Positions 4,190-23,020 of a stretch of DNA of 64,000 nucleotides are shown here, piece after piece (within the stretch, counting starts at the first letter, position 1; each line of letters opens with the position of its first letter). Made by a program: the position numbers and the translations under genes. The notes below the pieces were generated by a model. It saw only the letters and a list, made by a program, of their open reading frames with translations, was not told the DNA's origin and searched no databases. Origin of the DNA: Octopus sinensis (Eukaryota); assembly GCF_006345805.1 (NCBI RefSeq), contig NC_042999.1, positions 69,378,001 through 69,442,000 of the forward strand, given 5' to 3'.

Positions 4190-4370
4190 GTGTGTTGACA
4201 ACCGACGCTGGTTTGTTTACAACTCTGTAGGTTAGGTGCTCGACAAAAGAGACCGATGGAATACGCACTAGATTTAAAAAAATAAACACTGAGGTAGATT
4301 TGTTCAACTAAAACCTTTCAATGTGGTGCCCCAGCATGGGCGCAGTCAAATGACTGAAACAAAAGATTAA
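4190..4370 (+). mobile_element. SINE family B 3' part after a (GT)n tract
   Basis: gacaaccgacgctgg...ccagcatgg..cagtcaaatgactgaaac shared with other B copies. Confidence 0.75.
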
Positions 4371-4734
4371 AGATAAGATGATGTAGTCGTAAATATTGCT
4401 AAAAAAAGACAGGAGAGTCACGATTGGAACGTCTTTGATCATAAATCTGTTGGTTCTAGAGTGATCTAAGTGTAAAGATCAGAAGTAAGGAAATAACCCA
4501 TTTAAAAGGAATGGATCCCGGAATTAAAGGTTTGACTTGGAGAAATGGTAGTGGTGGTGGGGTGAGTGTTAAGGAGGTTGCAGGGACAACTTCGCAACCT
4601 CTCTACTTTCCTAACTATTTACTTAGGTTGTACTGAGCTTGAAGACGCTGAAATGGGGTCATGGGAGTTTCCCTTCCTTGTTTAATTAAGACATTAGAAT
4701 AAATAGGTTATAAATCTATTACAGCTTAGGGTAT

Positions 4735-4995
4735 TGATAAAAGAGAGATGGGGAAAGAGAGATGGAGAGAGAGGGAAGAAAAGAAGAGGGATAATGGGGA
4801 GACAGGAGGGGACGAAAGAGAAAGACAAAGGGAGAAAGAGAGCGGAGAGGAGGTGGAGAAAGATCGATAGGGGGAAAGAAAGAGGACGAAAGGGGGTGGA
4901 GATGAGAGGAGGAGGGAAGGACAAGGGTGAAAGAAAGCGATAAGAAACAGAAATTAATGATTTTATGAATGGAAAGAGGGAAGGGGAAAGGGAGA
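4735..4995. repeat. Polypurine (GA-rich) low-complexity tract
   Basis: Almost exclusively G/A over about 260 bp. Confidence 0.85.
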
Positions 4996-5016
4996 GAATG
5001 AGCAGGTAATTTAGAA

Positions 5017-5207
5017 TAATTTTGGCACAAGGCCAGCAATATTTTTTTTGAGGGGTGGGGTAAGTCGATTACATCAACTGGTATTTATTTTATCAACCCG
5101 AAAATGATAAAAGGTAAAGACGACCCTGGCGGTATTTGGACTCAGAACGTAAAGTCGTCGTTACGCATTTTGCAGGGCGTGCAGTCGATTCTGCCAGCTC
5201 ACCTCCG
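5017..5207 (-). mobile_element. SINE family A (tail type 2)
   Basis: Reverse complement of the 1654 copy. Confidence 0.8.
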
Positions 5208-5318
5208 CCATTAGAGATAAGTGAATATTGACATAACTTTTTTATGGAAAGCATATTGGAGAGATTTATTAGTGTTCTAATGTTGGTAATGGAATAATAA
5301 TAACAACAACAACAACTA

Positions 5319-6085
5319 GCCCAGAAGGAATATAAGAGACGCCACCACAATATAGCAAGGCTTGTCCATTGGGCACTTTGCAACGGGTATGAACTTGACA
5401 GAGCAAAAAATTGGTACGATCATAAACCTGAAAGCATCATCGAAAAAGATAATGCAAAAATCCTGTGGGATTTTATGATTTAGTGCGAACATGAGATAGA
5501 GAATAGAAAGCCAGACATAGTCATAATTGAGAAAGAAAACAAACAATGTTGGATCATAGGTATAGCATGCCCAGCTGACAACAAGGTATGCGATAAAGAA
5601 GAAAGAAAAGTCGATGGATATAACAGGTTAGCTTGGGAAGTTAAGCGGTTTTGGTTGATGAAAAAGGTGGTAGTAGTACCAATAATTGTCGGAGCCCTGG
5701 GAACAGTGAGTAAAAATCTTGAGAAGTACATGGAACAAATAAGGGCTGCAATTAGGGTGGAGCACTTGCAGAAAACAGCACTGCTTGGAACCGTTCGAAT
5801 ACTCTGGAAAGTGCTCGAAAAATACGAGGTGTTATCTTAGTTCACTGGTAGTGAACAGCTGATACCGCAGTACACCTCCAACGTTAGAAGCTGTGCAAAG
5901 GCAATAACAATAATAATAATAATAGTAATAATAATACAAACAACAACCTATCAGTTGCTGAGAAGTTCAGGACTGAAAGCAAAGACTGAATGTTTCATAT
6001 TGGTGGTACAAGATCAAAGCTTGCTTACAAAAACGTCCATGCTAACATTATTCAAAACGGTTCTGGCCCTAAATGCAGATTCTGC
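5319..6085 (+). mobile_element. R4/Dong-like non-LTR retrotransposon 3' end (restriction-like endonuclease) with (AAT)n tail, plus an upstream-type fragment
   Basis: YKRRHHNIARLVHWALC, KILWDF, RKPDIVIIEK, VVVVPIIVGALG, LQKTALLGT; 3'UTR then (aat)n at about 5903-5935; LKAKTECFILVVQDQSL fragment at 5950-6040. Confidence 0.8.
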
Positions 6086-6129
6086 ATTTAGGGTCAAATG
6101 ACTCAGAACAAGTCACTGATCTCATCGGA

Positions 6130-7310
6130 ACATATATGAAGTGTATAACCTATTCCAGATCGAGTCCTGGTTTCCTAGGATAGGAAGACGCTCTCTTCGT
6201 ACTAGATAGGTATAATAAAGTAGAAATGGAGAGATGTAAGAAACGCCCAATTAAATTCTTTAGAATTTTCGGGCAATCTGTTACTTAGAAAATAATTACT
6301 GTAAGATACATTTTTTTAATGTAACATTTAGTCTGGATACCGGGTTTGAACCACATGATAAACCGAACGAAAACCTAAGGTACTTAAATAAAATATCTAA
6401 TCACCCACTCTCTATAATAAAAGGACTTATAAACAATATATCCAATCGAATATCTAGACTTTCGGCAAGTGAAATGAAATTTAATTCGCATGCACATTAT
6501 TACAATGTAGCATTAGCTAGACCAAGTTATATTGAGAAAATCTATACCTAAAGATAATCGTATTAATGTACATAGTCACAATAATAATAGCACAAAACCA
6601 TAATTAAGAGAAGAAATTATAAACATAAAATAGAGGAAGGTGGTCATAAGAAGGTAAAAGGCATAATAAAAAAAAACTAAAAGGGAAAATAGGGCTAATC
6701 TAAATATTAATTATAACTGGTAATGACCCTACCACAGATTATAGTAGTAGTCATAAACCGAACAAAAGTATAAAAGATGCAATGTTTTGTTGTATAATCC
6801 AATCTTCGGACAAGTATCATACAAAATTGCTAGGAACTTCTTTGCTGCATTGGAGAAGCAGTTTCCAAAATCTAATAAATACTATAAGATTTTTAATAGA
6901 CATACAGTAAAAGTATCGTACACTACATCTAAAACGAATACTATATTCATAAACTCAATAATAGAAAGATAAACCCGGAGTTAACTAACAGAATTGGTGG
7001 AGGTAAAGATAGAATTGATTTATCTAAAAAGAATCGTAATAGTATAGAAGAAACTAATGAAGCACGTCCAAATGGCCATGACAGAAATAATAATGTAAAA
7101 AATAATATGATAAAATAATAATGGCAAAAATAATATGAGTAATAATAGATATGCTGAAAAATCTGAATGATAGAAGCGTTGGAAACAGCAACAAGGGTGG
7201 TAATGAAGAGTATATGAAGAGAACTAATAATAAGCACTGACACAATAAAGGGAAAATTAGAAATAGAAGAAAGACTGGTTACGACCGATTGGAAAACAAT
7301 GTGATAAGCA
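6130..7310 (+). mobile_element. Degraded Penelope-like element (Hydra-type RT/thumb), 5' part
   Basis: Frames resemble FLNVTFSL..KPNENLRYLNKISNHP..NISNRISRLS and YNPIFG..IARNFFAALEKQFPKSNKYYKIFNRHTVKVSY, homologous to the 39-41 kb element. Confidence 0.65.
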
Positions 7311-7316
7311 ATAATA

Positions 7317-8565
7317 TTGGGTCATCCCATAAATAATGCGGTTTTTTTCAATTGCATGAACTACAAGTTGGAGGGGGACGATATAAACTACTTCCATGAA
7401 CTTGTAAAAGCAGGTAGTAATTCTATCTTGTTCGTATTCTTAGTGCAAGTTTTGAAGAGTGCTGTTCGATTTTAACAGTTATTTTTTCAAAGCTATAATG
7501 GAAGTGTCAAAGAAGCATATTCAGCATATTTTGCTTTATGAGTTCAATAAAGGCAATGACGCAACAGAAAGTGCGAGGAATATTAATTCAGTATATGGGG
7601 ATCGGACAATAAGCATAAACCAGTGTCAACGGTGGTTCCAGAAATTCCGAGCCGGAAACTACAACCTAGAAGACGAGCCTCGTCCTAAAAGTTCGGTAGA
7701 ACTCGACGAGAACGTCCTGCACATCCTAGTGGAACAAAATCCGATCGTAACTGTTGAGGAACTAGTAGAGAAGCTTGGATTTGGTCATTCAACCATTCAT
7801 CGACACCTGCGTGCCATCGGAAAAGTCAGCAAAATAGGTCAATGGGTTCCTCACAAACTTTCTGAGTCTAATCGCGCGCAGAGAGTGAATGTGTGCTCTT
7901 CTTTGCTGTCACGTCTCACGAATGAACATTTTTTGGACCGAATAGTGACTAGTGACGAGAAATGGGTTCTCTATGAAAATGTCAATTCACCGGGTAGGGA
8001 AAGGCGAAACACCGGCACCCCAAGCTAGAGAAGGTCTTCACCGACGTAAGGTGTTGTTAACTGTTTGGTGGGATACGAAAGGTTTAATCCACTCTGAACT
8101 TAGAAGCCCAAACCAAACGATAACAAATGATATCTACTGCGAGAAGAAAAACGACCATCTTTGGTTTCAAGACGAAAGGTGTTCTTCCCTCAGGATAATG
8201 CTCGGCCAAATACAGCGAGAATGACATTCCAAAGGCGAGGGCAGTTTGAATGGGAAACGATGCCCCACCCACCATATTCGCTGGACATTGCCCCATCTGA
8301 TTATCATTTATTTTGCAGTCTTCAAAATCATTTGGACGGAAAAAATATAAATTCTGTAGATGAAGTCAGAACAGTATTGGAGGGGTATTTTTCGTCATGG
8401 ACAAGTGAATTTTGGAAGAGAGGCCTTGCAAGTGTACCAGGTAGAGGGAAGAGCATTGTAGAAAATGAAGGAGAGTTTATTTTAGATTTTAAAAAAAATT
8501 TGTTTATCTTAAATTTGAAAAATAAAAGAAGTATTAAAAAACGCATTATTTATGGGATGACCCAA
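7317..8565 (+). mobile_element. Full-length mariner (DD34D-type) transposon, frameshifted transposase
   Basis: TA-flanked TIRs TTGGGTCATCCCATAAATAATGCG; ATG 7498 MEVSKKHIQHILLYEF (HTH); WVPHKL, TSDEKW, QDNARP, HPPYSLDIAPSDYHLF; about 1249 bp. Confidence 0.95.
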
Positions 8566-8571
8566 TACTTT

Positions 8572-8870
8572 CAGTGACAGCAATGTATGTTCACTGAAAA
8601 ATGAATGCCTTCGGAAGAACTTAATGTACAAATTCACAGTGAGAACGCTAGCAGTTGCATTTGGTGCGACTGCAGGTTCCTTCCAAAATCGATATTGAAA
8701 CCATATTGTAGCCTTTAATAAGAGACACTGCACACCCCTCGATGACCTGGTCTAGAGACTTAAGGAAGGTACCGCGCAATACAACATTAAATGGTCGATA
8801 ATAAAAAAAGGCATATCCATATAATGCGTTCTCGAGATTTTTCTAGTCTCTGTTCTGAGGAAGCCCTGTG
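8572..8870 (+). mobile_element. GIY-YIG endonuclease remnant continuing the Penelope-like element split by the mariner
   Basis: CSLKNECLRKNLMYKFTV..AFGATAGSFQNRY*NH..LKEGTAQYNIKWSIIKK matches the CPL..CL..VY..YIG.T..F..RY.NH pattern. Confidence 0.6.
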
Positions 8871-9496
8871 CATTTCAATGAGTGCAGATGAACTGGCGCA
8901 CAGGTTCTCCGAAACAGTTATAAGATGCAACTGAAGATTAAAATGTTTCATTTCGCAGTTTTGTAAAAACAATTAACGTTTGAAACTCTATCCAATCAAT
9001 CTACATCAACCCTCCTCTCTCTATCATTTTATGTATTTGTCTCGGGTTTTCAAAATAGTTCCATGTATGTTAGAAGAATATATACGATTATGTCAGATTG
9101 TATTATCTATCTCAATATTTTACAAACGGTATGAATGTATGTAAGAGGTGTACATACGTGCATATATAAATAGATGTATATATGTATGTAGGTATAAAAC
9201 AATGTGCGTTACTTTGTGCGTGGTTGTCTGGGGCAATGTACATGCGGGGCGGGTATCTTTTTGTCTTTCTTATTGTTTGAAAGCAGCGCATAAAAACTAG
9301 ACGATAATAAATTAACTTTAAACAGAGACTCATTCTAGACTAGGATGGGGAATTGTTTTGTCGCGAGAAAAAGGAGGGTAATTCAGATTTTTTAAAGAGA
9401 CAAGGAAACAGTTCTGAAGGACTGAAGTGATCTGTCTTAACTTCCTTATCAATTTATCATCATTAAACGCCTTATTTTATTCTGTAGTCTGTTAAG

Positions 9497-9847
9497 TGGA
9501 GGCGCAATGGCCCAGTGGTTAGGGCAGCGGACTCGCGGTCATAGGATTGTGGTTTTGTAAGTGTTTATTGAGCGAAGACACTTAAAGCTCCAAGAGGCTC
9601 CGGCAGGGGATGGTGGCGAACCCTGCTGTACTCTTTCACCACAACTTCCTCTCACTCTTTTTTCCTCTTTCTGTTGTACCTGTATTTCAAAGGGGCCAGC
9701 CTTGTCACACTCTGATTCTCCCCAAGGACTACGTTAAGAGTACACGTGTCTGCGGAGTGCTCAGCCACTTACAGGTTAATTTCACGAACAGGCTGTTCCG
9801 TTGATCGCATCAACTGGAACCCTCGTCGTTGCAACAGACGGACTGCC
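9497..9847 (+). mobile_element. tRNA-derived SINE family C
   Basis: Head ggcgcaatggcccagtggttagggcagcggactcgcggtc; tail cgtcgttgcaacagacggactgcc. Confidence 0.9.
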
Positions 9848-10170
9848 GGAAGAAGTCTGTTTAGAAGTCTGACCATTCTGAATGAAAGTCAACATTTACG
9901 CTTGAGTGACTGCGTGTCTGCGTGCGCGCACATGCGTGTATGAATGTAACATGTGCATGTAAGTTGCATAAAAATAACAATAGCCGTCACTCGCAAGCGA
10001 ATATGACTTCGTTATAAAGTAATATATTTTAGTATAATTGCCTTTGTAGTCGGGAACAGACACAGGCATTTTTTCTTCCCACTCCACAATCATTGACTCA
10101 GCTGTCACATCCAGGATGTGGCAGCTGGAGAGAGGAAGGGACGTGTATATATATATATATATATATATAT

Positions 10171-10471
10171 CACCGTGACCGACCAGGCCACCAGATGTTG
10201 TTACACATCGCTGGTCACAATGCGCTTCACATTGTTTTAGCCTTCAAATGTCGCCACCCCGCTGGCTAAGCGAGCAAGCCAACAGAAGAAAGAGTGAGAG
10301 AAAGTTGTGGCGAAAGAGTACAGCAGGGATCGCCACCACCCCCTGCCGGAGCCTCGTGGAGCTTTAGGTGCTTTCGCTCAATAAACACTCACAACGCCCG
10401 GTCTGGGAATCGAAACCACGATCCTACGACCGCGAGTCCGCTGCCCTAACCACTAGGCCATTGCGCCTCCA
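10171..10471 (-). mobile_element. SINE with family C head and body but a different tail (C2)
   Basis: About 185 bp reverse-complementary to 9497-9660, then unrelated tail ending ggtcggtcacggtg. Confidence 0.85.
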
Positions 10472-10529
10472 TACACACACACACATATATATATATATGA
10501 AAACTCCGAATATATATATATATATATGT

Positions 10530-11272
10530 GACTCCGACACTCGGGTTGTTCGGGCTTAGCCCGAGTATAAGTTTAGTAGATTTAGTAAAGTGAACGCGTA
10601 TTTGCAAGCTGATTTAATTTCTGCCAGCACTGACTTCAAGTATGTAATTGCAGCCAATAACTCGGGCTTCTTTTATTGAGCCTGGTCACTGTTCATTTCT
10701 TTTCGTTCAGCGTCTGGCGGTCGTCTTAGAGGTGTCCTGTGTCAAAAAATATCATTCGTAGCAGACGTTCTCTCGGTATCGTTCACAAGAGTCTGACTCG
10801 AGCTCAGAAGTTACAGCCCGAGTTGCTATCTCTAATCGTAAAAATTAAAAGTAATTCAAATTCTATTTTTTCTTGAAACAATGAATTTCTATAGAGATTA
10901 GGATTTAAATTCCAATCTATGTAAAGTTTGCGTTCTACAATATTCTTAAAGGAACACAAAATTATCCAGCCTGGTCGGTGTAAAAGACTAACTGGCATCT
11001 CTTGTCAAGTGTACAGGCGACAGTCAGATCGCTAGTGTTTGTTGTGCACTCCGCTGTCGTTATTTGATTGTCTGTGTGTAAAAATCACTTGTGTTTTGCG
11101 GGATTGCTTTATTTTTACTCCTAACTTAGAAATAGAGAAATACATAGTGTTCGATATAGAAATAGGCTATTTGGGGCTAGAAATAAAGCGGAAAACGGGA
11201 AATTCTTCGAGCAGGCATGTGTCTTATGCGACATCGGTGATGGGCCCGAGTGACGCTGAGGGCCTGAGTCGT

Positions 11273-11278
<6 letters not shown>
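10530..11278. mobile_element. Unclassified insertion between (TA)n tracts with a GC hairpin near the left end
   Basis: TCGGGC-TTA-GCCCGA hairpin at 10550-10564; ctcggg/cccgag motifs near both ends; TA tracts on both sides. Confidence 0.3.
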
Positions 11279-11355
<77 letters not shown>

Positions 11356-11580
11356 AGAGAGAGAGAGATGGGAGCTGTACTAACACTTGGGTTGGTAATC
11401 GTTTTCAGCTGAGTAAATTAGGAATATGAAATGATCCGTCTTATTGAAGGACACAGTGCGCAACTCCGTCCACGAATCGAACCCATGACATTATAATTGT
11501 GAATCCTACACCTTTACCACTTGACTACGTGCCCTCACAGAAATTGTGTTTATTACAGTTTGAATTATTTTTAAATCTCT

Positions 11581-11738
11581 GAGGAGTTTCTGTGTGGTAA
11601 GTAGCTTTCTCCCCAACCACATGATTCTAGGTTCAGTCTCACTGCGTGGTACCTTGGGCAAGTGTCCTCTACTATAGCCTCGAGCTGATAAAAGCCTTGC
11701 AAATGGATTTGGTAGAGGGAAACTGAACGAAGCCCGTC

Positions 11739-11776
<38 letters not shown>

Positions 11777-11820
11777 GTATGTGTGTGCGTGTGTATATGT
11801 GTGTGTGATCACTGCTTGAC
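11581..11820 (+). mobile_element. SINE family B (CORE-like ccttgggcaagtg)
   Basis: tRNA-like head, gtaccttgggcaagtgtc, internal (TA)n. Confidence 0.8.
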
Positions 11821-11849
11821 ACTTGGACCTCTGTACATATTTTTATTTT

Positions 11850-12151
11850 TTGAAGCCTGATACTTAGTTAATCGGTCTCTTTTGCCGAACCGCTAAGTTA
11901 CGAGGATGTAAATACACCAACACCGACTGTCAGGCGGTGGATGGAGGGTGAATAAATGCGCGCGCACGTGGACACATAAACACACATACACGACGGCCTT
12001 CTTTCAGTTTCCGTCTACCAAATCCACTCGCACGGCTTTGGTCGGCCCGAGGCTATAGTAGAAAACACTTGCCCAAGGTGCCACGCAGTGGGACCGAACC
12101 CGAAACCATGTGGTTGGCAAGCAAGCTTCTTAACACGCAGCCACGCCTGCG
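11850..12151 (-). mobile_element. SINE family B, inverted and adjacent to the previous copy
   Basis: Reverse complement of the B consensus. Confidence 0.85.
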
Positions 12152-12691
12152 CTTGCATGTCAGCTACTGATACACGGAGAATACACCTGCATCAGTGGAG
12201 GTTGAAAAACGGATGGCAACCACCCTGGCTACTCTATACATGCCCTGTACTGTTCTCTATTTTGTACTGTCGATGTTATTTAGTTGCAAATCAGCGTTCA
12301 TCGAACATATGACGAAAGACGTTCCAGTTGTGACCATCTTGTCTTTTTCATAGGCGTCTAAGACTACATTAGCGTGATGTGTCCTCTCGGTTGCCTTTGG
12401 TCATGGGTCAACTTAATCATGGTTGATCTGCTTTTTAATAACAATAACTATTTAAGATCATTTGTATTGTTAATGTGTCTGAGAAAAGCATGAAGTTCAC
12501 AAAATCTTATGACCTCCAAGTTTTATAAATCTAACGGCCTATTTAGGGAATGGGTTACTTTAATACAAGGAAATTCTTTACTTTGGCAAAGAAGGTTCTG
12601 CTATTGTAAATGTTTGGTTGTTACAAACTATTACACGAAGGCCGTGATTTACATATTTGACGGATATTTTCCTCATCTTATTTATTGTTAG

Positions 12692-12733
12692 CACAACGTT
12701 TTGGCTGATATACCCTCCAGCCTTCAACAGGTG
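12692..12733 (-). ncRNA. Hammerhead motif with mutated catalytic core
   Basis: Minus strand CAC-CTGTTGA-aggctg..cagcc-AAAA-cgttgtg; both conserved boxes altered. Confidence 0.55.
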
Positions 12734-12857
12734 TCTTGGGGAAATTTCGGACCTGGGGTTTCATGCATAAGGTATTTTTCGTTGTTGTTGTTGTTATAAT
12801 TATTATTATTGAGGTCACTGCCTGGAACGAGAACCCAGGTTCGAAATTTCCCCAAAG

Positions 12858-12899
12858 CACCTGATGAAGGCTGGGAAGTATATCAGCTGAAACGTTGTG
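12858..12899 (+). ncRNA. Minimal type I hammerhead ribozyme motif, core intact
   Basis: CAC-CTGATGA-A-GGCTG(ggaagtatat)CAGCT-GAAA-CG-TT-GTG: CUGANGA and GAAA boxes, stem II, minimal palindromic ACGU stem III, stem I CAC/GTG. Confidence 0.7.
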
Positions 12900-13371
12900 T
12901 TAACAACAAACAAGATGAGGATAAATATCCGTCAAATGTAAATAATGTACATAATTCCTCATCTCTTAAATATAGAACTGCCTAAATACCAATCTTGAGA
13001 AATAAGGCTTCTCAAAACCAGAAAGGAGAAAACTAATTCGAAGACTACAGATTCAATCCGTCATTGGAACAGTAAAAATCTGTAAAACATTCCAGAAGTT
13101 TATCATTTAAGTATATATGAGCTGTCTAGATATGCAACTATATGCATGAGAATACATACATAAAGCAAAGCATACATACATACACTGTTGATGTTGAAAT
13201 TCCAACGAAGGAGCCTTGGATTTGGGTTAGATACCGTTTTTTTCTCGATTAGCAAGAAATCTTGAAATAAAACTGAATAATGACATACATTCATATCTGC
13301 AACACCTTAAGATTTAAAGAACGATGAACAAAACAAGATGCTTTCTTTCACAACCTAAAAATTAACACTAA

Positions 13372-13375
<4 letters not shown>

Positions 13376-13436
<61 letters not shown>
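13376..13436. repeat. (GA)n microsatellite
   Basis: Direct reading. Confidence 0.95.
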
Positions 13437-13438
<2 letters not shown>

Positions 13439-13726
13439 CATACATATTTGAACGTATACACATACAGTAACAAAACATATTCACCTGTTTTCTATTGAGA
13501 CATACACACCCACGGGTGCAAGTTTATCCACACGTACACTCATATGCACGTTATGGTAACACTCATAATAAGGATAGGTATAGACTGCATAAGGAGTACA
13601 CTGGTCACCCTGTATTTCAGATTTTTGAAAACCTTAACCCATTGCCTGCCATGAGCCCCATTTGGGGATCTGCTAAAAACAGTCTCACTGCTGGTTGTTC
13701 GTTGTATTTAAAGTGAATTACTTATG

Positions 13727-14300
13727 TATCAGGTCATCCCATAAGTTCTGTCCGAATTTTAAATAAAGAAAACAACTGATCAAATGTTATATTTAATTGA
13801 AATTTAATCATCAGTGTACTTTCCCTGATTATCTATGACTTCCTTCTATCTATTTACAAGATTTTTAATCCCATCAATATAAAACTCTTTTGGTTTCAAA
13901 GCGAAGAACTCTGAAATGTTAATTTCGACCTCCTCCTGACTTGCGAAAGTTATGTCCCTCAAATGATTCTGTAAACTACGAAACAAATGGTAGTCTGAAG
14001 GAGCAAGGTCGGGAGAATAAGGTGGATGAGGAATTTTTTCCCAACCTAGCTCTTGGCTTGCGAAAGTTATGTTCCCCAAATCATTCTGTAAACTACGAAA
14101 TAAATGGCAGTCTGAAGGAGCAAGGTTAGGAGAATAAGGTGGATGAGGAATTTTTTCCCAAACAAGCTCTTCGATCTTCTGTGATGTGGTCTTTGCAGTG
14201 TGGGGTCGCGCATTGTTTTGATAAAACATCACTCCTTTTCGATTCACTAAAGTGGGTCTTTTTTTCTTCAAAGCTTGGTTCAAACGCTCTAATTGCTGAC
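13727..14300 (-). mobile_element. Mariner 3' fragment with a 117 bp in-frame internal tandem duplication
   Basis: TIR-like tatcaggtcatcccataag at 13727; YQNNARPHTA and two copies of WEKIPHPPYSP(N/D)LAPSD(C/Y)HLFRSLQN. Confidence 0.9.
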
Positions 14301-15055
14301 AGTAGATTGCATTTGCAGAGGTATGTTTAACAATATTTAGTAATTAAAGTCTGTGATTATTAGCTCTGGATAATTCTAGAAGACATTTTATGTCATAAAT
14401 CGCAATTTTTGAACTACAAAAATATTGGCTGTTATTGAAAACGTTTTTTTTTTGGGGGGGGGCATTTCCCATCTATATCATTCATTGATATTTCATATAC
14501 ATTCCCATTTGACACTATAGTTTAAAAATTAGTTTTTAAAAAATGTTTATTATTGCAATTGAATAGCAAAGGATAAATGTGCTTTTTTTCAGCGATCCCC
14601 TTTTGGGACTTTCCGAAAAATTTATCATAATTTCCAAAATAATTCACATATGTAGAAAATTTAAATACTATATATTACTTTAACTCCTAAGACACCTGGA
14701 AAAGCCAAGAAATATGAGTAAAAAATTCGGCAGTGAATGGATTCAATACTGAATTTGATGGCATTTAGGACGCCTTTTTTTTTTCTTCTTCTTCTACTTT
14801 TCGAAAAAATATTTACAAAAATCATCCCAAATCCTATAAGTGAGTTTGGTGCTTCCTCAAAGTTTAAAGCATTTAAAACTCTCTTTGTCCTGAATATGCG
14901 CTGCTGAAATTGAGATGCAGCTAATGTGCCCGTGTGTTTTTTAGGCCATCAGACATTTTTAACCTACAGACCCCTTTGGTTCGCATTTTCCTCTACTGGA
15001 CCCTAAAAAAGATCCTATTATATTTTAATAGCTAAATATTATTAGAAATTGTTTT

Positions 15056-15428
15056 CTTTTATTTGTTTCAGTCATTTGACTGCGGCCATGCTGGAGTACC
15101 GCCTTTAGTCGAACAAATCGACCCCAGGACTTGTTCTTTATAAGCCTATTCTGTCGGTTTCTTTTGCCGAACTGCTAGGTTACGGAGACGTAAACACACC
15201 AACAGCGGTTGTCAAGCGATGGTGGGAGTACAAATACAGATACACAAACACACACACATATATATACGACGGGCTTCTTTCAGTTTCCGTCTACCAAATC
15301 TACTCACTTGGCTTTGGTCGGCCCGAGGCTATAGTAGAAGACACCGGCCCAAAGTGACACGCAGTGGGGCTGAACCCTAAACCATGTGGTTGGGAAGCAA
15401 GCTTCTTACCACACAGCCACGCCTGCTC
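15056..15428 (-). mobile_element. SINE family B, full length
   Basis: Head ggagcaggcgtggctgtgtggtaag; tail cagtcaaatgactgaaacaaataa. Confidence 0.9.
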
Positions 15429-15785
15429 CTAAAAAATTGTTAAAATATTTTGTGCATAGCAGAAGTTTAACCAGTCTACTGGGCATTTTAATAAACTTTT
15501 ATGTGGACCCCAACGGGTCATATGACTCTCTCCCCCCCCCACCGTCCCGGGTTATATGGACTCCGGCTGAGAACGAAATGGTATATGCCATAGGTAAAAA
15601 AAAAAGCAAAGAAACTGAAGTCGTATAAAGATAGGCATGTGTCCATGATGCGATGCACGCGCACACATATGTATGTGTGTGTGTGTGTGTGTTTATCCTT
15701 TTCTCTCGATATACAGGTCAGGCTATATTTATAGCGGTTAATAAATTTAAAATAAAACTAGTTTTAATTAGCACACCCCTCTCTT

Positions 15786-15816
<31 letters not shown>

Positions 15817-16019
15817 CACACACACACACATATATATCTTCAACGAGGACAGGCCAAGGCAAGCAGTGTTCGTGACAGAAAGTGAATTCAGTAGTTCAAA
15901 TATTGATTTCTTCCCAACAAGTTCTTCACCAATCTCTCTATATTTCTAAAACTTTGACATGGTTTCAACCGAGATTAAAATAAATAAATGAAGCCACTTT
16001 TCTGTCAGCTGTTACTTGG

Positions 16020-16119
16020 CTAAGTGACCAAGTCACAGCTGACACGTACGCGCTGGATAGATACATATACACCTATAGTATGCTTATTACACACACACAC
16101 ATTTGTATGTGTGTGTGTG

Positions 16120-16151
<32 letters not shown>

Positions 16152-16510
16152 CATTTGTATATGTCTACATGAAATATATTCGTTACACACACCGTTGTAT
16201 ATACATCCACCTACGGTATGGTTTATCACACGCATACAGACCGATGTATACACTTACCTATGTTTTTATACACATGTATTTGCATACATCTGTTTTCAGT
16301 ATGTTCTATACACATTATACACGTTTATATACAATCTACACACCTTATGTTTTATGCACGGCTACCCACGCTCTTTTACCCACTTTATGTTCTACACACA
16401 CACACACACACACGCATACACACAATTGTATATACCTATACACGTTCTTTACACACACAATTGTATGTATATATACATGAATATATATATATATTTATAT
16501 ATATGTATCT
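16020..16510. repeat. Cryptic CA/TA microsatellite field
   Basis: Degenerate (CA)n/(TA)n; source of spurious HTHT/YIYI ORFs. Confidence 0.9.
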
Positions 16511-16517
16511 TTATCTT

Positions 16518-16650
16518 TTATCTTTTACTTGTTTCAGTCATTTGACTGCGGCCATGCTGGAGCACCGCCTTTAGTCGAGCAAATCGACCCCGGGACTTAT
16601 TCTTTGTAAGCCCAGTACTTATTCTATCGGTACTTATTTGCCGAACTGCT
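16518..16650 (-). mobile_element. SINE family B tail fragment
   Basis: cttgtttcagtcatttgactgcggccatgctgg. Confidence 0.8.
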
Positions 16651-16653
16651 AAG

Positions 16654-16698
<45 letters not shown>

Positions 16699-16850
16699 CA
16701 GTAATCCCTCGACTATCGCGGGTGTTACGTTCCAAAAAACCCCGCGATAGGTGAAAATCCGCGAAGTAGAAACAGTAATGTACTGTATATTTTTTTTAAT
16801 TATTTTTATAATTTGTATCTATTTATTTGATTATAAATGCAAAACAACAG
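16699..16850 (+). mobile_element. pogo/Tigger-type transposon terminus
   Basis: CAGTAATCCCTCGACTATCGCGGG..CCGCGATAGGTGAAAATCCGCG resembles Tigger TIRs. Confidence 0.7.
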
Positions 16851-16908
16851 CACAAAGGACAAGTCGACGTAAGTTTAAGTAATAAACCGCAATATGGCGA
16901 GGGACTAT

Positions 16909-16956
<48 letters not shown>

Positions 16957-17085
16957 CACACACATATAGTATGTTCTATACAAATACACACACACATACT
17001 TGTATACATCTCCACCATATGTTGTTTAAACACACGCATCTACTTCCAGTTTGTTCCTCTCTTTCACACTCACACATACATACAT

Positions 17086-17120
<35 letters not shown>

Positions 17121-17499
17121 GAGTTTCAAATAACTTGAAAATAAACAGTTGAAACATAAGGCACTCGTTTGTCTTCTCTGGACATTTTCGATGTTTACCG
17201 TTCCGGGAAGGGGAATGGAGCGCTGTGACATTCATGCCTTTCCCTGGAGTATTGTCAAAAGCTGAATTGATATGTATGGATGCGTGTTTGTATGCATATA
17301 TATATATATATATATATATATTTGCGGGTGTATGTGTGTTGTATGTATGTATGTGCCGATGTGTATGTTTATATATGTACGTATTACATGTTGGATATAC
17401 GTGTATTTGTATACAAATACAACACACACACACGCTGATGCTTGTTTTTATGTTTAGTTATAATCAAAGCAATTTTACATTAATCTGAGGCATTACTCT

Positions 17500-17570
17500 A
17501 CCCAACGATGGCTTAACCGGCCGAAACTTCGAAGTCGCTCTCAACAATATCCTTCTTTAAGAATACACAC
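17500..17570 (+). mobile_element. pLTR-like fragment with a degenerate hammerhead (palindromic stem III ACTTCGAAGT)
   Basis: ggcttaaccggcc-GAAA-cttcgaag-TC; near-identical copy at about 18722-18790. Confidence 0.5.
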
Positions 17571-17905
17571 ATACATACATATATACTTACATACTCACAC
17601 ACGCATACATACATAATACATACATACATATATACACACACATACATATATACATACATACATATATATACTCACACACGTACACACATATATACTTACA
17701 CACATACACGCACACATACATACATATATACTTACATACTCACACACGCACACATACATAATACATACATATATACACACACATACATATATATATATAC
17801 ATACATATATACTCACACACGTACACATACACACATATATACTTACACACACACGCACACACAAATACATACATATGCATAATATATACACTCACACACA
17901 CACAC
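17570..17905. repeat. Cryptic (TACA)n/(CA)n field
   Basis: Direct reading. Confidence 0.9.
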
Positions 17906-17907
17906 AC

Positions 17908-18128
17908 ACGAAGAGGTGCTGAAAAGTTCCTGGCTTTAAGGGTGTCGCGGAAGGTCTGGCTGGAGGCCTAACCTTCCGAGGTCTTTTACAAGGCTGAGAA
18001 AAACTGAAGGACCTCTGCAATCTGTGTGAGAATCTGAGAAAGGAATATTTTGAATAGAATCATAATTAAATGATCCTCCCGTGTTCTCTTTTACCCCCAA
18101 ACCAGGAAGTTTTCAGCACCCCGTCGTA
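17908..18128. mobile_element. Mariner-derived MITE
   Basis: TIRs acgaagaggtgctgaaaagttcctgg / ccaggaagttttcagcaccccgtcgta; sister copy at 48519-48740 in the opposite orientation. Confidence 0.8.
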
Positions 18129-18721
18129 CAGAAAGAGGGGGGAGAGGAAGGAGGTGTACACATGTATGTTGGTTCCGATGTATGTATGTATGTATGTATG
18201 TATGTATGTATGTATGCCCAAATCTTTGTATACTTAAGTATTAAGTTAACGCGACTTTGTTCAACGATATGACAGCAATACTTGTTAAACAACAAATATA
18301 TATATATACCACAAAGCGTCAATATGCAATCACCATTGTTAAACTTGATTATCACCATAATATAACATATTGTATGAACGTGTCAACTGGTTTCCTTGAA
18401 AAAGGCGATACTGTCACAGCATTCTAGAGAACAATTTACGATTATATCGAAACAAACGAATATAAATTAGCATTGATTTATTTTTCAGTTTATTTATTTA
18501 TTTGCTGCTTTTTAAGTCAGTAAATTTCGTATGTACAACCAACCAGCTGATTTCCGTTTCTGTCCGGCAACACGAAAGAACTTGCCAACACTGGTTGACA
18601 TATTAAGAGAGGAGAAAAAAAAAAGGGGATGTATGTACCAACACACACACACACACACATAAACATGTTGACGCGCGCGCGTAAATTTATTAATCTTAGA
18701 CAAGAATATGACTGGCAGTGA

Positions 18722-18790
18722 CCTCGTCGAACGCTGGCTTAACTGGCCGAAACTTCGAAGTCACTATCAATAATATTGTTGCTTAAGAAT
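18722..18790 (+). mobile_element. Second copy of the pLTR-like fragment with a degenerate hammerhead
   Basis: ggcttaactggcc-GAAA-cttcgaag-TC. Confidence 0.5.
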
Positions 18791-18879
18791 AATAAAGTTT
18801 TACTCTACAGAAATATAGAGTAACCCTCCAGATTAATGTAAAATTGTTTTTATTATTACTGAATATAAAAGCAAACGTT

Positions 18880-19190
18880 AATATGTGTGTGTATGTATGT
18901 ATGTATGTATGTATGTATGTATGCATGCATGTATGTACGTACGTATGAGTGTATGTATGTGTGTGTGTATGTATGTATGTGTGTGTATGTAGGTATGTGT
19001 GTATGTATGTGCGTGTATGTGTGTATATATATGTGTACGTATGTGTGTATGCATGCGTGTATCTGTATGTGTGTGTATGTACGTATGTGTGTGTGCATGT
19101 ATGTGTGTATATGTATGCAGGAGTGTGTATATATATGTGTGTATATGTATGTGTGCATGTATGTATGTGTGTATGTATGCTTATATATGC
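18880..19190. repeat. Cryptic (TATG)n/(TG)n field
   Basis: Direct reading. Confidence 0.9.
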
Positions 19191-19216
19191 GAGCCCACAC
19201 GATGGGTGGAGTAAAA

Positions 19217-19341
19217 TAGTATTTTTATAGAAGCTGGAAAAACTTCACACACTCTTACCAGAGTTTCACGGGACTGATCATCAGACAGTCACAGTCGTAT
19301 TCTAAACAAGTTTGTGAAGTTTTTTCAGCTTTGATAAAAAC

Positions 19342-19343
<2 letters not shown>
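19217..19343. mobile_element. Small fold-back (about 33 bp arms) enclosing a hammerhead-like core
   Basis: tagtatttttatagaagctggaaaaacttcacac versus inverted tgtgaagttttttcagctttgataaaaacta; minus-strand CTGATGA..GAAActctggtaagagt in the loop. Confidence 0.55.
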
Positions 19344-19372
<29 letters not shown>

Positions 19373-20290
19373 ATAGAGAGAGAGAGAGAGAGGGAGATTT
19401 CAACATTCCAAATTCATATATAGATGTTATATTTGTGTGAGGTATGTATAAAAGTAAAAAATGCAGGAAAATATTTTCCGCAAGCTAATATCAAAACTCC
19501 TATTAACAAATGAAACACATGTAATGGGGAATAAATAATACCCAAAAAAGTTTCCAACCCCCTGTTCATATATATATATATATATATATATAAACACACA
19601 GACACACACACACACACACACACCACACGTACACAGAGACTAAAACAGACATATACACATACACTCATCAATGAGCGAATCACTAAAGAAAATTGTGGAA
19701 TTTCTTTGCGAAGTTTGTTTCAAGATAAACCATTTTATATCTTTCGCAACAGAAAGCCAAAAAATTCGTTTTAAAGTTCTTTTACAAAAAGCTTTACAGT
19801 CAGAGGAGTTGTTAAGTAAATGTTGATTTAATGAGGAAATTAGTAAAACTCGATATAAAGAGAAGAAAAGGGTGAAATTATTGTTTCATCTTTCATGATT
19901 TAATTATGTATTTACATTGGAAACCGGGAAAATAGTGTATTTTATTGTGGTTTTCATGAAATTCGAGACTGCTTCCACCATACAGGAGTCATGTCATCAA
20001 CCGGTATCAACTGACAAGATATTTACAGTTTAAAAGCAGAAGAAATACTAGATTGATTGAATAACCGGATAGATCGTTATCCAAATAGAAAGACATTGTT
20101 TAATAAAAAGTGAATTGTGATGAAGTCTTTCTAATGAAAGATCGATCGCTACAATCAATCAATAGTCGTGAAACACATTTGGAAATTTATAAAACATAAC
20201 GACGATCGAGTCGAGACGTGGACTGACAGGAAGTAAGAAAGTTGTTTAAAAGTTTAGAAATCGTGTTGAATGTAATAAAAGGATGCAAAC

Positions 20291-20434
20291 CTCGTCAAGA
20301 ACATGTTCTAAGGGCTGTGAGTTTTTGATAACCTCTTCCTCAAGACCTGTCTCTATTTTACAATCTTCGGTTAGTAAAGTTTCCGAAATTTCATTTGGTT
20401 GGGGCTTCACGAAATGTTGTTGTAGCGCAACCAC
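20291..20434 (-). CDS. ESRP: ESRP homolog, second coding exon (144 nt, phase 0-0)
   Basis: Acceptor tccttcttataaacatacttctacag| and donor GAG|GTTTGC. Encodes VVALQQHFVKPQPNEISETLLTEDCKIETGLEEEVIKNSQPLEHVLDE, matching ESRP1 VGQLHEVLVRP..LTEDCKEETKID..QLDQALRQ. In frame with the previous exon. Confidence 0.92.
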
Positions 20435-20781
20435 CTGTAGAAGTATGTTTATAAGAAGGATTAAATAAGATCTAAACTAAACTAGGATTAAATCAGATTA
20501 TTTCTTAAAATGTATGTATAAACATTTTTTTTTCTCAAAGAATATTTATAAGATTATTTTAAAAACATGAATATTTGAGATGTTTTTAAATGTTAAAAAG
20601 TAGATCGAGAAGAAATGAAAATATTTAAATATTTAATTATGCAAACTAATCAGTTTGTTTTCTAAATTAAAAATTTTCGTATACATTAAAGGCAAGTTGA
20701 AATCAATATTAACAAGGCAAAGTGAGGTGTTGGCTGAGAGAGAGGGGAGTTTTAGAGAAGTTTTGTTTGTGTCTACATTAC

Positions 20782-20907
20782 CTTATTGTTGGTGACATCG
20801 TAGAGTAAATAGACCAGCAGTACAATTTGTTCTTCGTCAACACCCAGCTCTTCGCAGTTTTTCCCAGTTGTGGCACAAAATAAAGCTAAGATATGTGAGG
20901 TAGCCAT
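20782..20907 (-). CDS. ESRP: ESRP1/2 (fusilli) homolog, first coding exon (N-terminal DnaQ-like domain)
   Basis: Manual translation MATSHILALFCATTGKNCEELGVDEEQIVLLVYLLYDVTNNK (42 codons) resembles the recalled human ESRP1 N-terminus ([38 protein letters not shown]). ATG at 20907, in-frame TAA at 20913-20911 upstream, donor AAG|GTAATG at 20781. Not in the ORF track. Confidence 0.92.
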
Positions 20908-20944
20908 CCTTTTACGGAGCCGAGGGAGATGAACAAGGAAAAAA

Positions 20945-20980
20945 CTAAGAGGAAGAAAAGAGAAGAGAAAAAAAACCCCA
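20945..20980 (-). promoter_or_regulatory. Strong 3' splice site 37 nt upstream of the ESRP ATG (implies untranslated leader exon or exons)
   Basis: Minus strand ttttttttctcttctcttttcttcctcttAG| with AG at 20946-20945 and a pyrimidine run of about 30 nt. Confidence 0.65.
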
Positions 20981-21297
20981 AAACACTACAGAAGCCAGTC
21001 TTGACTCTTGGTGTTTTTGCTAAGAAGGTGTTTTGTATTAAGAGTGCCACATTACCTGTAGCCCAACTTCTTTTGAATAAGACCCTAGCTGATTGGATGA
21101 ATTCATCTAACGTGGCATTGACTGGATATCTTAGTTGGTATTCCGCGCTTGCGCGCAGGTGTGTTTTTACCTGTTGATTAACCAGCCGAGTAACACAAGC
21201 AAGCTGTTACAGTATAAAAAAAAATCCGCTCGTACCCAGGTGATTGATTCGCGCAAGTGAATGACAACACTTGTAAAGGGTATCATTTAAGTAACTC

Positions 21298-21352
21298 TCG
21301 CTTGAGGGTACATGAATAAGCCACGGTTTTATATATCCACCCGACTCCACCC
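21298..21352 (-). promoter_or_regulatory. Candidate proximal ESRP core promoter (2x GT-box, TATA, Inr)
   Basis: Minus strand GGGTGG at 21352-47 and 21342-37, TATAAAA starting 21333, TCA(+1) at 21303, so TATA is at -30. Downstream CAG|GTAA donors at 21170 and 21055. Confidence 0.6.
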
Positions 21353-21881
21353 AAAAATACCGACTCGGAAACTTTTTTCTTAGCTAATTGATGTGTGTGT
21401 GTTAACCTCTTCCTTTCTCCTTCCCCTTCTCTCTCTCTCTCTCTCTCTCTTTCTTTCTCTCTTTCTTTCTCTCACCTGTTGCTGATATTGTTGACTACTA
21501 TAATCAGATATCTACCGGACTGACTCAAAACAAAGATAGCAGCAGTTAACACATCAACAATAACTGCAACAACAATATACGAAAGGGCGCGATAACTTAA
21601 AAGTTACTTTCTCCGGTGATAAAGTTTCTTTAACAATGGAATTCCTTGAAGATCAAGAAGGATGACAAAAAACGACACAAAGTTCCTGATAACCAAAAGA
21701 AATTAACACACACTTATCTCTATACGTATATCTTGTCATCGTATCTTTCTTCCGATGCTGGCACAAATATATTTATGTATTCCAGTCGCATGGAGGGAGA
21801 CATTTTTGACCTATCCTAGTTTTTTTTCTCCTTCCCCCCTCTCTCTCGCTCTCTTTCTCTCTCTCACTCACTCTCACTAAC

Positions 21882-22151
21882 CTCGGTACAATTATTTAGT
21901 AGCTAATTACCCATTATCAATCCCATTCATCAGAGATGTCAAGTTTACAGAGAATAACTCGTATCGCAATGATTTTGTTTTTCTCTTCCTCCAAATCAGT
22001 TCTTTCTGACAGAACAAGAATTTTACGAAATAAAGCATTTTACTTTCTGTGTCGAAACCGGAAGAATTCGATGCTTTTGTGTTCTTCTTATTATTTTTAT
22101 TTCTTCTTCAACCAATTGGACGTTGTCGGTAAATTCTCCTCCTTTATAAAG
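21882..22151 (-). promoter_or_regulatory. Candidate distal ESRP promoter and non-coding leader exon
   Basis: TATAAA starting 22148 inside palindrome CTTTATAAAG; CA(+1) at 22117 puts TATA at -31; donor GAG|GTTAGT at 21881. Confidence 0.5.
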
Positions 22152-22405
22152 CTGATGAGTCGACAGAGACCTAATTAGTTGACAAAATTAGTGAATTACA
22201 TACAGCTAATTGCTCCCCGTTGTTGTCTCTACTACATAAAATTTGTATTTCATTTATTCTCTCTTAATTCGGGCGGCAACAGACGACAACATGAAGTTGT
22301 GGATCTGATGGCTTCGCGATCTCTTAAGGCCGATACTGAGAAAACAGCAGTGGTGGTGGTCGTGATGGGATTTAGGATAGAGAGAAAGTGAAGAATAATA
22401 ATTTT

Positions 22406-22800
22406 CAGGTATGGCTCTATGGTAAAAAGCTTGCTTCCCAATCACATGGTCCTGGATTCAGACCCACGACGTAGCATCTTGGGTAAGTGTCTTTTACTAT
22501 AGCCTCGGGCCGATCAAAGCTTTGTGAGTGGATTTGGTAGACGGAAACTGAAAGAAGCCTGTCGTGTGTATGTATATTAATGTGTGTGTGTCTGTGTTTA
22601 TCACCCCACTATCGCCTGACAACAGATGTTGGTGTGTTTACGTCTCCATGACTTAGTGGTTCGGCAAAAGAGACCAATAGAATAAGTACTAGGTTTACAA
22701 AGAATAAGTCCCGGGGTCGATTGCCTCGACTAAAAACCCTTTAAGGCAGTGTTCCAGCATGGCAGCAGTCAAATAACTGAAACAAGTAAAAGAATAAAAG
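22406..22800 (+). mobile_element. SINE family B, full length (bounds the ESRP promoter island)
   Basis: Matches the B consensus. Confidence 0.9.
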
Positions 22801-22849
22801 AATAGAAATGTGAGGTTTTTTTTTTCTGCCCCGGGCACTCCCCAACTGA

Positions 22850-23020
22850 GAAGATACGTGTTCAAAGACATTTCAGTCGTGACCATCCAAGTTTATTTCC
22901 AGATATATCTACGACTTCACAATGTCTATTAAATATTTAAGGAGTTGAGGGAGATATGAAGAATATTTAAATACTATTTCCAGCAGATCGAGTCACTACC
23001 TAGAGGCTCCCTCGTCCGCT
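22850..23020 (+). mobile_element. Unclassified interspersed repeat family E (also about 4390-4480, 12310-12400, 34900-35140, 48055-48260)
   Basis: Shared ttcc/ttcagtcgtgaccatc..ctatttc(t/c)agca..tcga..gaggctccct motifs at five or more loci. Confidence 0.55.

What the first reader, a model, noticed from the sequence alone, without database searches (positions are those of the whole stretch)
20291..20907. Hidden ESRP/fusilli 5' end missed by the ORF track
Two small phase-0 exons splice into a 90-aa sequence matching the ESRP DnaQ-like N-terminus. ESRP is the known master regulator of epithelial splicing. From memory, both intron positions coincide with human ESRP1 exon 1/2 and 2/3 boundaries, which would indicate deep intron conservation. 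This turns the first 20 kb into pre-mRNA and gives context to everything below.
Basis: partly seen in the sequence, partly recalled or inferred. Interest (0 to 1): 0.72.

Follow-up and report, generated by a model that had tools for sequence, protein, structure and literature searches.

The report
Octopus ESRP1 gene's first coding exons
The two small exons are real and encode the first 90 amino acids of the octopus ESRP1 splicing regulator, but public Octopus genome annotations already hold exactly this sequence, so the finding is correct and ordinary.

Summary
Confirmed, and already known. On the minus strand, 20907..20782 (ATG to AAG|gtaatg, 42 aa) and 20434..20291 (ag|GTG to GAG|gtttgc, 48 aa) join in phase 0 to a 90-aa peptide. 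It is 100% identical to residues 1-90 of annotated Octopus sinensis / O. vulgaris ESRP1 (XP_029633591.1, CAI9719470.1).

Window 1..22907 is 100% identical to O. sinensis chromosome CM016861.1 (window position w = 69,378,000 + w). The only solved-structure match is human ESRP1 (7wrn, E = 2.4e-8). An N-terminal-domain profile then finds ERI1/CRN-4 DEDDh exonucleases, so "DnaQ-like" holds, although the ExoI and ExoIII catalytic residues are replaced.

Exact splice maps put both introns (K42|V43, E90|M91, phase 0) in the same alignment column and phase as in a gibbon-family ape, a bat, a paddlefish, Mytilus and the annelid Ridgeia. The human genome itself was not available, so the ape serves as proxy.

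Exon 3 is not in the window. Positions 1..20290 all lie inside a 21,566-nt intron 2. The true first exon and transcription start are unresolved, and no octopus RNA-seq could be consulted. This is a correct manual annotation of a known gene. Conserved intron positions of this kind are usual among bilaterians, so interest is low.

The parts
20782..20907 (-). ESRP1 coding exon 1: start codon at 20907-20905, aa 1-42 (MATSH...TNNK), donor AAG|gtaatg. It carries the degenerate ExoI motif (L9-F10-C11 where DEDDh exonucleases have D-F-E).
20435..20781 (-). Coding intron 1: 347 nt, GT..AG, phase 0. If retained, an in-frame stop follows two codons after K42.
20291..20434 (-). ESRP1 coding exon 2: aa 43-90 (VVALQQ...HVLDE), acceptor ttctacag|GTG, donor GAG|gtttgc.
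1..20290 (-). The first 20,290 nt of coding intron 2 (21,566 nt in total, phase 0). Exon 3 (aa 91-164) lies about 1.28 kb beyond window position 1. No ESRP1 residue after 90 is encoded in the window.
20908..20944 (-). 37 nt of 5'UTR between a strong acceptor (pyrimidine tract ...ttcctcttag|) and the ATG. The start has a good Kozak context (aaaaggATGg).
21911..22038 (-). Upstream exon used by O. vulgaris model CAI9719467.1 (777 aa). It has an in-frame ATG at 22038, donor GG|gtaatt at 21910, and is spliced to 20944. It is probably 5'UTR. Its 5' limit is unknown, and a TATAAAGG lies at 22148-22141.
21069..21210 (-). Conserved non-coding block upstream of the ATG exon. Six collinear exact 6- to 14-mers (including a CCAAT box and TGCCACGTTA) are shared with the 5'UTR of a related cephalopod's ESRP cDNA (L006). 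This is a candidate core promoter or true 5'UTR.
7459..8577 (+). Decayed Mos1/mariner-like transposase remnant inside intron 2 (HTH_48, E = 1.7e-22).
13846..14283 (-). Second mariner-type transposase remnant (DDE_3, with an internal duplication) inside intron 2.

Best explanation
The region is the 5' coding end of the single-copy Octopus sinensis ESRP1 gene (the ESRP/fusilli family), transcribed from the minus strand. Two phase-0 exons (20907..20782 and 20434..20291) encode residues 1-90, and a 347-nt intron separates them. A 21.6-kb intron follows, filling window 1..20290 and running past its edge. The other 12 coding exons lie outside the window; the gene has 14 coding exons over 89.6 kb.

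The 90 residues form the first strands and helix of an N-terminal ERI1/DnaQ-like (DEDDh-fold) domain. The ExoI acidic residues of that domain are replaced here, and the ExoIII residues are replaced further downstream. It is therefore most likely a non-catalytic structural or interaction module placed in front of the RNA-binding RRMs, which carry the splicing-regulator activity.

Shown here: gene identity, exon and intron coordinates, intron-position conservation, and homology of the fold. Inferred: loss of nuclease activity, and an epithelial-splicing function in octopus.
For: - The 90 aa equal residues 1-90 of XP_029633591.1/XP_029633592.1 (O. sinensis) and CAI9719470.1 (O. vulgaris).
- Window 1..22907 is 100% identical over 22,907 nt to CM016861.1.
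- The exact splice map has a unique GT-AG solution at every junction.
- Human ESRP1 structure 7wrn is the sole PDB hit (E = 2.4e-8; profile E = 2.1e-34).
- All 16 database hits are ESRP/fusilli proteins of molluscs and an annelid, 63-94% identical.
- A transcriptome contig from a related cephalopod (L006, ESRP 82% identical) is uninterrupted across both junction positions.
- Both introns are conserved in column and phase in six species.
- The N-terminal-domain profile hits CRN-4, ERI1, ERI2 and ERI3.
- Catalytic residue alignments: the ERI2 D-F-E motif aligns to (gap)-F10-C11. ERI1 ExoII Asp aligns to D114, ExoIII His to E175 and ExoIII Asp to Q180.
Against: - No octopus transcript or RNA-seq data could be consulted, so the junctions rest on the public gene models, on homology and on a cDNA from another species.
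- Pfam gives no hit on the 90 aa alone.
- Exon 2 alone has no PDB hit, and exon 1 alone reaches only E = 0.095.
- The ExoI alignment to ERI2 is weak on its own (E = 0.12 for the first 90 positions).
- The 5' end of the mRNA is unresolved, because three first-exon models remain possible.
Confidence: 0.95

Rival explanations
1. The real protein starts further upstream. Translation would begin at the in-frame ATG at 22038, in an upstream exon (..22038-21911) spliced to 20944. This adds 55 residues before MATSH, as in the 777-aa O. vulgaris model CAI9719467.1, so the reader's exon 1 would be exon 2 and not the N-terminus.
For: Residues 1-43 of the 777-aa model map at 100% identity to 22038..21910. 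There is a GT donor at 21910 and an AG acceptor at 20946-20945, and no stop codon lies between the two ATGs in the spliced sequence.
Against: - Every ortholog examined, from mollusc to ape, starts at M-x-x-S-[HY]/D-Y, aligned with MATSH.
- The RefSeq isoforms X1-X3 start at MATSH.
- The extension has no homolog, and the main ATG has the stronger Kozak context.
- A related cephalopod's cDNA reads colinearly with the genomic sequence just upstream of the ATG exon, which argues against this splice being obligatory.
- The exon may well be a real 5'UTR exon without its ATG being used.
Confidence: 0.08
2. The two ORF pieces are a non-functional relic (a pseudogene fragment or duplicated 5' end) and not part of the expressed ESRP1 gene.
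For: Only 90 of 722 residues are in the window. The next exon is more than 20 kb away, which could look like an orphan fragment from the window alone.
Against: - In the chromosome the remaining 12 coding exons follow colinearly on the same strand, and the whole 722-aa protein is reconstructed exactly with GT-AG introns.
- There are no stops or frameshifts.
- O. bimaculoides keeps the exons with 265/270 nt identical and one amino-acid change.
- Esrp is single-copy in most metazoans (PMC5703972).
Confidence: 0.01

Closest known systems
Octopus sinensis ESRP1 (XP_029633591.1/XP_029633592.1; gene on CM016861.1, about 69.31-69.40 Mb) and O. vulgaris CAI9719470.1
   Same: Identical. The 90 aa equal residues 1-90, and the window DNA is 100% identical to this locus.
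   Different: Nothing differs. The finding re-derives the annotated first two coding exons.
Human ESRP1 (PDB 7wrn, residues 1-310) and vertebrate ESRP1/ESRP2
   Same: - It is the ortholog: 46% identity over the whole protein to ape ESRP1.
- The domain order is the same, with an ERI1/DnaQ-like N-terminal domain followed by RRMs.
- The first two coding introns share position and phase, and 10 of the 13 octopus introns are shared by all five species mapped.
   Different: - The octopus protein has a 5-residue insertion (NEISE region) in exon 2.
- Its intron 2 is 21.6 kb, against about 1.2 kb in the mammals.
- Vertebrates have three extra introns (after aa 125, 296 and 606) and lack the one after octopus aa 340.
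- The octopus protein keeps a complete C-terminal RRM (Pfam RRM_1 at residues 641-718 of the Argonauta ortholog P0001). The octopus-ape alignment ends at ape residue 656 of 681.
ERI1 / CRN-4 / ERI2 / ERI3 DEDDh (DnaQ-like) 3'-5' exonucleases
   Same: The fold is homologous. Profile E-values run from 1.7e-14 to 7e-8 over about 175 residues, and the ExoII Asp is retained (D114).
   Different: The ExoI Asp and Glu, the ExoIII His and the ExoIII Asp are not conserved (L9/C11, E175, Q180). Catalysis by the canonical two-metal mechanism is therefore unlikely, and the domain is not a member of the active enzyme family.
Drosophila fusilli
   Same: It belongs to the same ESRP family, going by the names sources give to the hits, for example 'RNA-binding protein fusilli-like' in Babylonia.
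   Different: It was not compared directly here.

Membership tests
ESRP/fusilli family (epithelial splicing regulatory proteins) | Sequence orthology: the best database matches are ESRP proteins, and only those | tested here: met
   All 16 hits are ESRP/fusilli-like proteins, 63-94% identical over 96-100% of the 90 aa. The 90 aa are 100% identical to annotated Octopus ESRP1. Human ESRP1 is the sole PDB hit.
ESRP/fusilli family (epithelial splicing regulatory proteins) | N-terminal DnaQ/ERI1-like exonuclease-fold domain | tested here: met
   The profile of residues 1-213 hits 7wrn (1.7e-91) and then CRN-4, ERI1, ERI2 and ERI3 (1.7e-14 to 7e-8). Pfam RNase_T matches 12 of 13 family members, with a best E-value of 1.4e-7. 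Only the first 90 residues of the domain are in the window.
ESRP/fusilli family (epithelial splicing regulatory proteins) | hnRNP F/H-type RRMs downstream of the N-terminal domain | tested here: met
   The full gene product mapped on L001 carries PF28441 RRM_11 and PF00076 RRM_1 and aligns with ape ESRP1 through the RRMs. These exons lie outside the window.
ESRP/fusilli family (epithelial splicing regulatory proteins) | Shared gene structure (intron positions and phases) with other ESRP genes | tested here: met
   Introns 1 and 2 fall in identical alignment columns, both phase 0, in octopus, Mytilus, Ridgeia, paddlefish, bat and ape. Ten of the 13 octopus introns are shared by the five species aligned together. 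The human genome itself was not tested.
ESRP/fusilli family (epithelial splicing regulatory proteins) | Expressed and spliced as predicted in octopus; regulates epithelial alternative splicing | not testable with these tools
   No octopus RNA-seq was accessible. The only indirect support is a cDNA contig from a related cephalopod that is uninterrupted across both junction positions.
Active DEDDh (DnaQ-like) 3'-5' exonucleases | ExoI Asp-x-Glu metal ligands | tested here: not met
   The ERI2 motif D-F-E aligns to (gap after L9)-F10-C11. Vertebrates have G, N or V at the Glu position. The alignment is weak by itself (E = 0.12) but belongs to a full-domain match of E = 2.9e-8.
Active DEDDh (DnaQ-like) 3'-5' exonucleases | ExoII Asp | tested here: met
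   The ERI1 motif TDG aligns with octopus T113-D114-G115, which is invariant in the ESRP alignment. It lies outside the window.
Active DEDDh (DnaQ-like) 3'-5' exonucleases | ExoIII His-x4-Asp | tested here: not met
   The ERI1 motif H-C-G-L-D-D aligns with octopus E175-Y-G-V-H-Q180, so His aligns to Glu and the catalytic Asp to Gln. It lies outside the window.

The most novel reading that the evidence does not exclude
The most novel reading still open concerns the 5' end. The roughly 140-nt block at 21210..21069 is conserved between octopus genomes and another cephalopod's ESRP 5'UTR. It may be the true first exon or core promoter of cephalopod ESRP1, with a CCAAT box and an E-box-like TGCCACGTTA. 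The annotated upstream exon with its in-frame ATG (22038) may then be an alternative promoter yielding an N-terminally extended isoform. This would be a small refinement of the gene model, not a new kind of element.
Probability: 0.3. Interest if true: 0.15.

Novelty: already known. Interest (0 to 1): 0.08.

Why it matters
The finding fixes the context of the window. Positions 1..20944 are ESRP1 pre-mRNA on the minus strand, almost all of it one giant intron littered with mariner remnants and microsatellites. Other features seen there should therefore be read as intronic.

It also shows that a prokaryote-style ORF track misses short eukaryotic exons. Scientifically it adds nothing new. The gene, its N-terminal DnaQ-like domain and its wide conservation are published and annotated. 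Shared intron positions between lophotrochozoans and vertebrates are a well-known general pattern.

Tried and rejected
- Pfam on the 90 aa and on each exon gave no hit even at E = 10. The local copy lacks PF28442 (DUF8400), and RNase_T matches only residues 62-173 of the full protein.
- Each exon alone against the PDB: exon 1 gave E = 0.095 to ESRP1 and exon 2 gave nothing. Only the spliced product is convincing.
- Later ESRP1 exons were sought in the window with tblastn (word size 2, E <= 10) and with exact 6-mers. Nothing beyond residue 90 was found apart from chance 6-mers on wrong strands or positions.
- The Argonauta hians locus was requested for exon-versus-intron conservation, but the gene range was too long and no DNA was returned.
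- O. bimaculoides comparison: non-coding DNA is 85-100% identical, so it does not tell exons from introns. A 556-N assembly gap also covers the position of the upstream exon.
- Human ESRP1 was not among the cluster members listed, so an ape and a bat were used instead.
- An Rfam scan of the whole window gave no family at gathering score.
- A literature search for PDB entry 7WRN found no descriptive paper.
- The pseudogene and chance-ORF readings were rejected, as set out under the rival explanations.

Full report
**Observation.** Read on the minus strand, the region contains an ATG at 20907. From there an open frame runs to AAT AAG at 20782 and is followed by gtaatg. Downstream, a pyrimidine-rich stretch ends in ttctacag, and a second open frame runs from 20434 (GTG GTT) to 20291 (GAC GAG), followed by gtttgc. 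The translations are MATSHILALFCATTGKNCEELGVDEEQIVLLVYLLYDVTNNK (42 aa) and VVALQQHFVKPQPNEISETLLTEDCKIETGLEEEVIKNSQPLEHVLDE (48 aa). The mechanical ORF list shows these only as 44-aa and 62-aa ORFs, which explains why an ORF track with a length threshold missed them.

**Identity.** The joined 90 aa has a single match among all solved structures, human ESRP1 (7wrn_A). It scores E = 2.4e-8, aligning residues 4-88 to chain residues 6-85. To get past the length filter of the large protein search, I padded the 90 aa with X to about the length of an ESRP and scored only residues 1-90. All 16 hits are ESRP1-like or fusilli-like proteins of molluscs and one annelid, from E = 1.7e-45 (Argonauta hians, 94% identity) to 3.9e-27. 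The 90%-identity cluster of the best hit contains the Octopus proteins. Residues 1-90 of O. sinensis XP_029633591.1/XP_029633592.1 and O. vulgaris CAI9719470.1 are letter-for-letter the 90 aa. O. bimaculoides differs at one position (I68T).

**Origin of the window.** The genomic locus of XP_029633591.1 (L001; O. sinensis GCA_006345805.1, CM016861.1:69,307,341-69,400,907, reversed) is 100% identical to window 1..22907 over all 22,907 nt. The window is therefore CM016861.1 position 69,378,000 + w. The finding re-derives the annotated start of a known gene.

**Gene structure.** I mapped the protein onto the locus by exact reconstruction with GT/GC-AG introns, and every junction had a unique solution.

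- The gene has 14 coding exons over 89.6 kb.
- Intron 1 follows K42 (phase 0, 347 nt; window 20781..20435).
- Intron 2 follows E90 (phase 0, 21,566 nt). Exon 2 ends at window 20291, so intron 2 occupies 20290..1 and continues about 1.28 kb past the window's left edge before exon 3 (aa 91-164).

In agreement, tblastn of the full protein and an exact 6-mer scan found no ESRP1 residue beyond 90 in the window. That intron carries a decayed Mos1/mariner transposase (7459-8577, +; HTH_48 E = 1.7e-22), a second DDE_3 remnant (13846-14283, -) and abundant microsatellite-like sequence.

**Intron positions.** I applied the same exact mapping to five other ESRP genes:

- the bat Hipposideros armiger (L002);
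- the paddlefish Polyodon spathula (L003);
- Mytilus galloprovincialis (L004);
- the annelid Ridgeia piscesae (L005);
- a gibbon-family ape (L007, protein XP_030651121.1/XP_063499532.1), whose residues 6-85 differ from human 7wrn at one position.

The first two introns are K44|V45 and Q87|F88 in the vertebrates, K42|V43 and E90|F91 in Mytilus, and K43|V44 and E91|F92 in Ridgeia, all phase 0. In a MAFFT alignment of the five species other than the ape, both introns fall in one column each (columns 43 and 91). The ape's introns fall at the same residues as the bat's. The independent HMMER alignment to human ESRP1 also pairs octopus K42 with human K44, and extends to octopus E90 paired with Q87.

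Ten of the 13 octopus introns share column and phase in all five species, and two more differ by a column or a few columns within poorly aligned low-complexity regions. Such conservation between lophotrochozoan and vertebrate genes is the general rule (established knowledge) and is not a peculiarity of this gene.

**Transcript evidence.** No octopus transcript data were reachable. The nearest substitute is a Logan transcriptome contig (L006, run SRR6517992). It encodes an ESRP that is 82% identical to the octopus protein over its whole length. Its ORF is uninterrupted across the positions of both junctions. This supports the spliced product in a related cephalopod, but it does not replace junction reads in octopus.

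**What the 90 residues are.** A profile of the N-terminal domain (residues 1-213, 13 ESRPs from molluscs, annelid and vertebrates) hits 7wrn at 1.7e-91. It then hits the DEDDh exonucleases CRN-4 (1.7e-14), ERI1 (about 1e-11), ERI2 (2.9e-8) and ERI3 (6e-8). Pfam RNase_T matches 12 of the 13 members. "DnaQ-like" is thus confirmed, and it agrees with the literature (PMC7014300; PMC5703972 also mentions the N-terminal exonuclease domain).

The residue alignments suggest that the domain is not a working exonuclease:

- The ERI2 ExoI motif D-F-E aligns to (gap after L9)-F10-C11. F10 is invariant, and the Glu position is C in molluscs and G, N or V in vertebrates.
- The ExoII Asp is kept as D114.
- The ExoIII His and Asp align to E175 and Q180.

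Of these, only the ExoI position lies in the window. I infer a non-catalytic structural or interaction module. This is an inference from alignment, and the ExoI alignment alone is weak (E = 0.12).

**The 5' end remains unresolved.** The ATG exon is preceded by a strong acceptor (...ttcttcctcttag| at 20946-20945), which leaves 37 nt of 5'UTR (20944-20908). The 777-aa O. vulgaris model CAI9719467.1 joins an upstream exon to this acceptor. That exon has an in-frame ATG at 22038, ends at 21911 and has the donor GG|gtaatt. Residues 1-43 of the model map there at 100% identity, and the spliced sequence has no stop between the two ATGs. Because every ortholog begins at the position of MATSH, I regard this extension as an artefact of choosing the longest ORF, on what may be a real 5'UTR exon.

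Against even that reading, the L006 cDNA's 5'UTR (nt 216-344) shares six collinear exact 6- to 14-mers with window 21210..21069:

- GTAACAGCTTG
- TCAACAGGTAAA
- GCGCAAGCG
- TGCCACGTTA
- CCAATC
- TCTTATTCAAAAGA

This block lies inside the supposed 5'UTR intron, in a stretch (21299..21000) that is 97-100% identical in O. bimaculoides. The first exon may therefore start upstream of 21210 and run uninterrupted to 20782. Alternatively it may end at the consensus donor CAG|GTAATG at 21055/21054. In O. bimaculoides the site of the upstream exon is an assembly gap of 556 N, so that genome cannot arbitrate.

**Verdict.** The feature is the already annotated 5' coding end of Octopus sinensis ESRP1. Its value is contextual, because it labels window 1..20944 as ESRP1 pre-mRNA on the minus strand. 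It is not novel, and interest is low.

Noticed in passing
window 21069-21210 (minus strand): A non-coding block just upstream of the ATG exon shares six collinear exact 6- to 14-mers with the 5'UTR of a related cephalopod's ESRP cDNA (L006 nt 216-344). They include CCAATC and TGCCACGTTA. The surrounding stretch (21000-21299) is 97-100% identical in O. bimaculoides. This is a candidate core promoter or true 5'UTR, and it conflicts with the 5'UTR intron of the O. vulgaris model.
   Followed up: partly
window 21911-22038 (minus strand); TATAAAGG at 22141-22148: An upstream exon in O. vulgaris model CAI9719467.1 has an ATG in frame with the ESRP1 start, which gives a 55-aa extension that is not conserved. 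In O. bimaculoides the corresponding position is a 556-N assembly gap (L008 about 2500-3060).
   Followed up: partly
window 7459-8577 (+) and 13846-14283 (-): Two decayed mariner/Mos1-type transposase remnants lie inside ESRP1 intron 2 (HTH_48 E = 1.7e-22; DDE_3 E = 1.3e-6). The second carries an internal duplication of the PHPPYSP(D/N)LAPSD(Y/C)HLFRSLQN segment.
   Followed up: partly
window 60200-62101 (+): Frameshifted reverse-transcriptase ORFs (RVT_1, E = 3.7e-12 and 2.5e-13). This is a decayed retroelement about 40 kb upstream of ESRP1.
   Followed up: partly
window 51386-52001 and 53472-54087 (+): Identical ORF pairs lie 2,086 nt apart, which indicates a perfect direct duplication of about 2.1 kb. 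It could be a recent tandem duplication or an assembly artefact. Pfam gives no hit.
   Followed up: no
window 40080-40898 (-) and 44704-45135 (-): Two sizeable ORFs (272 aa and 143 aa) have no Pfam match. They are probably remnants of transposable elements.
   Followed up: partly
L001 (outside the window), ESRP1 aa 663-670: Octopus ESRP1 has a 24-nt micro-exon (QSSSRNSQ) that is absent from the other four species mapped. The 714-aa isoform X3 is exactly 8 residues shorter than X1, which fits alternative skipping of this exon.
   Followed up: no
window 16000-19700 and 35350-36200: Long tracts of imperfect TG/CA- and TA-rich microsatellite-like repeats generate many spurious ORFs rich in Y, I, H, T, C and V on both strands.
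   Followed up: no
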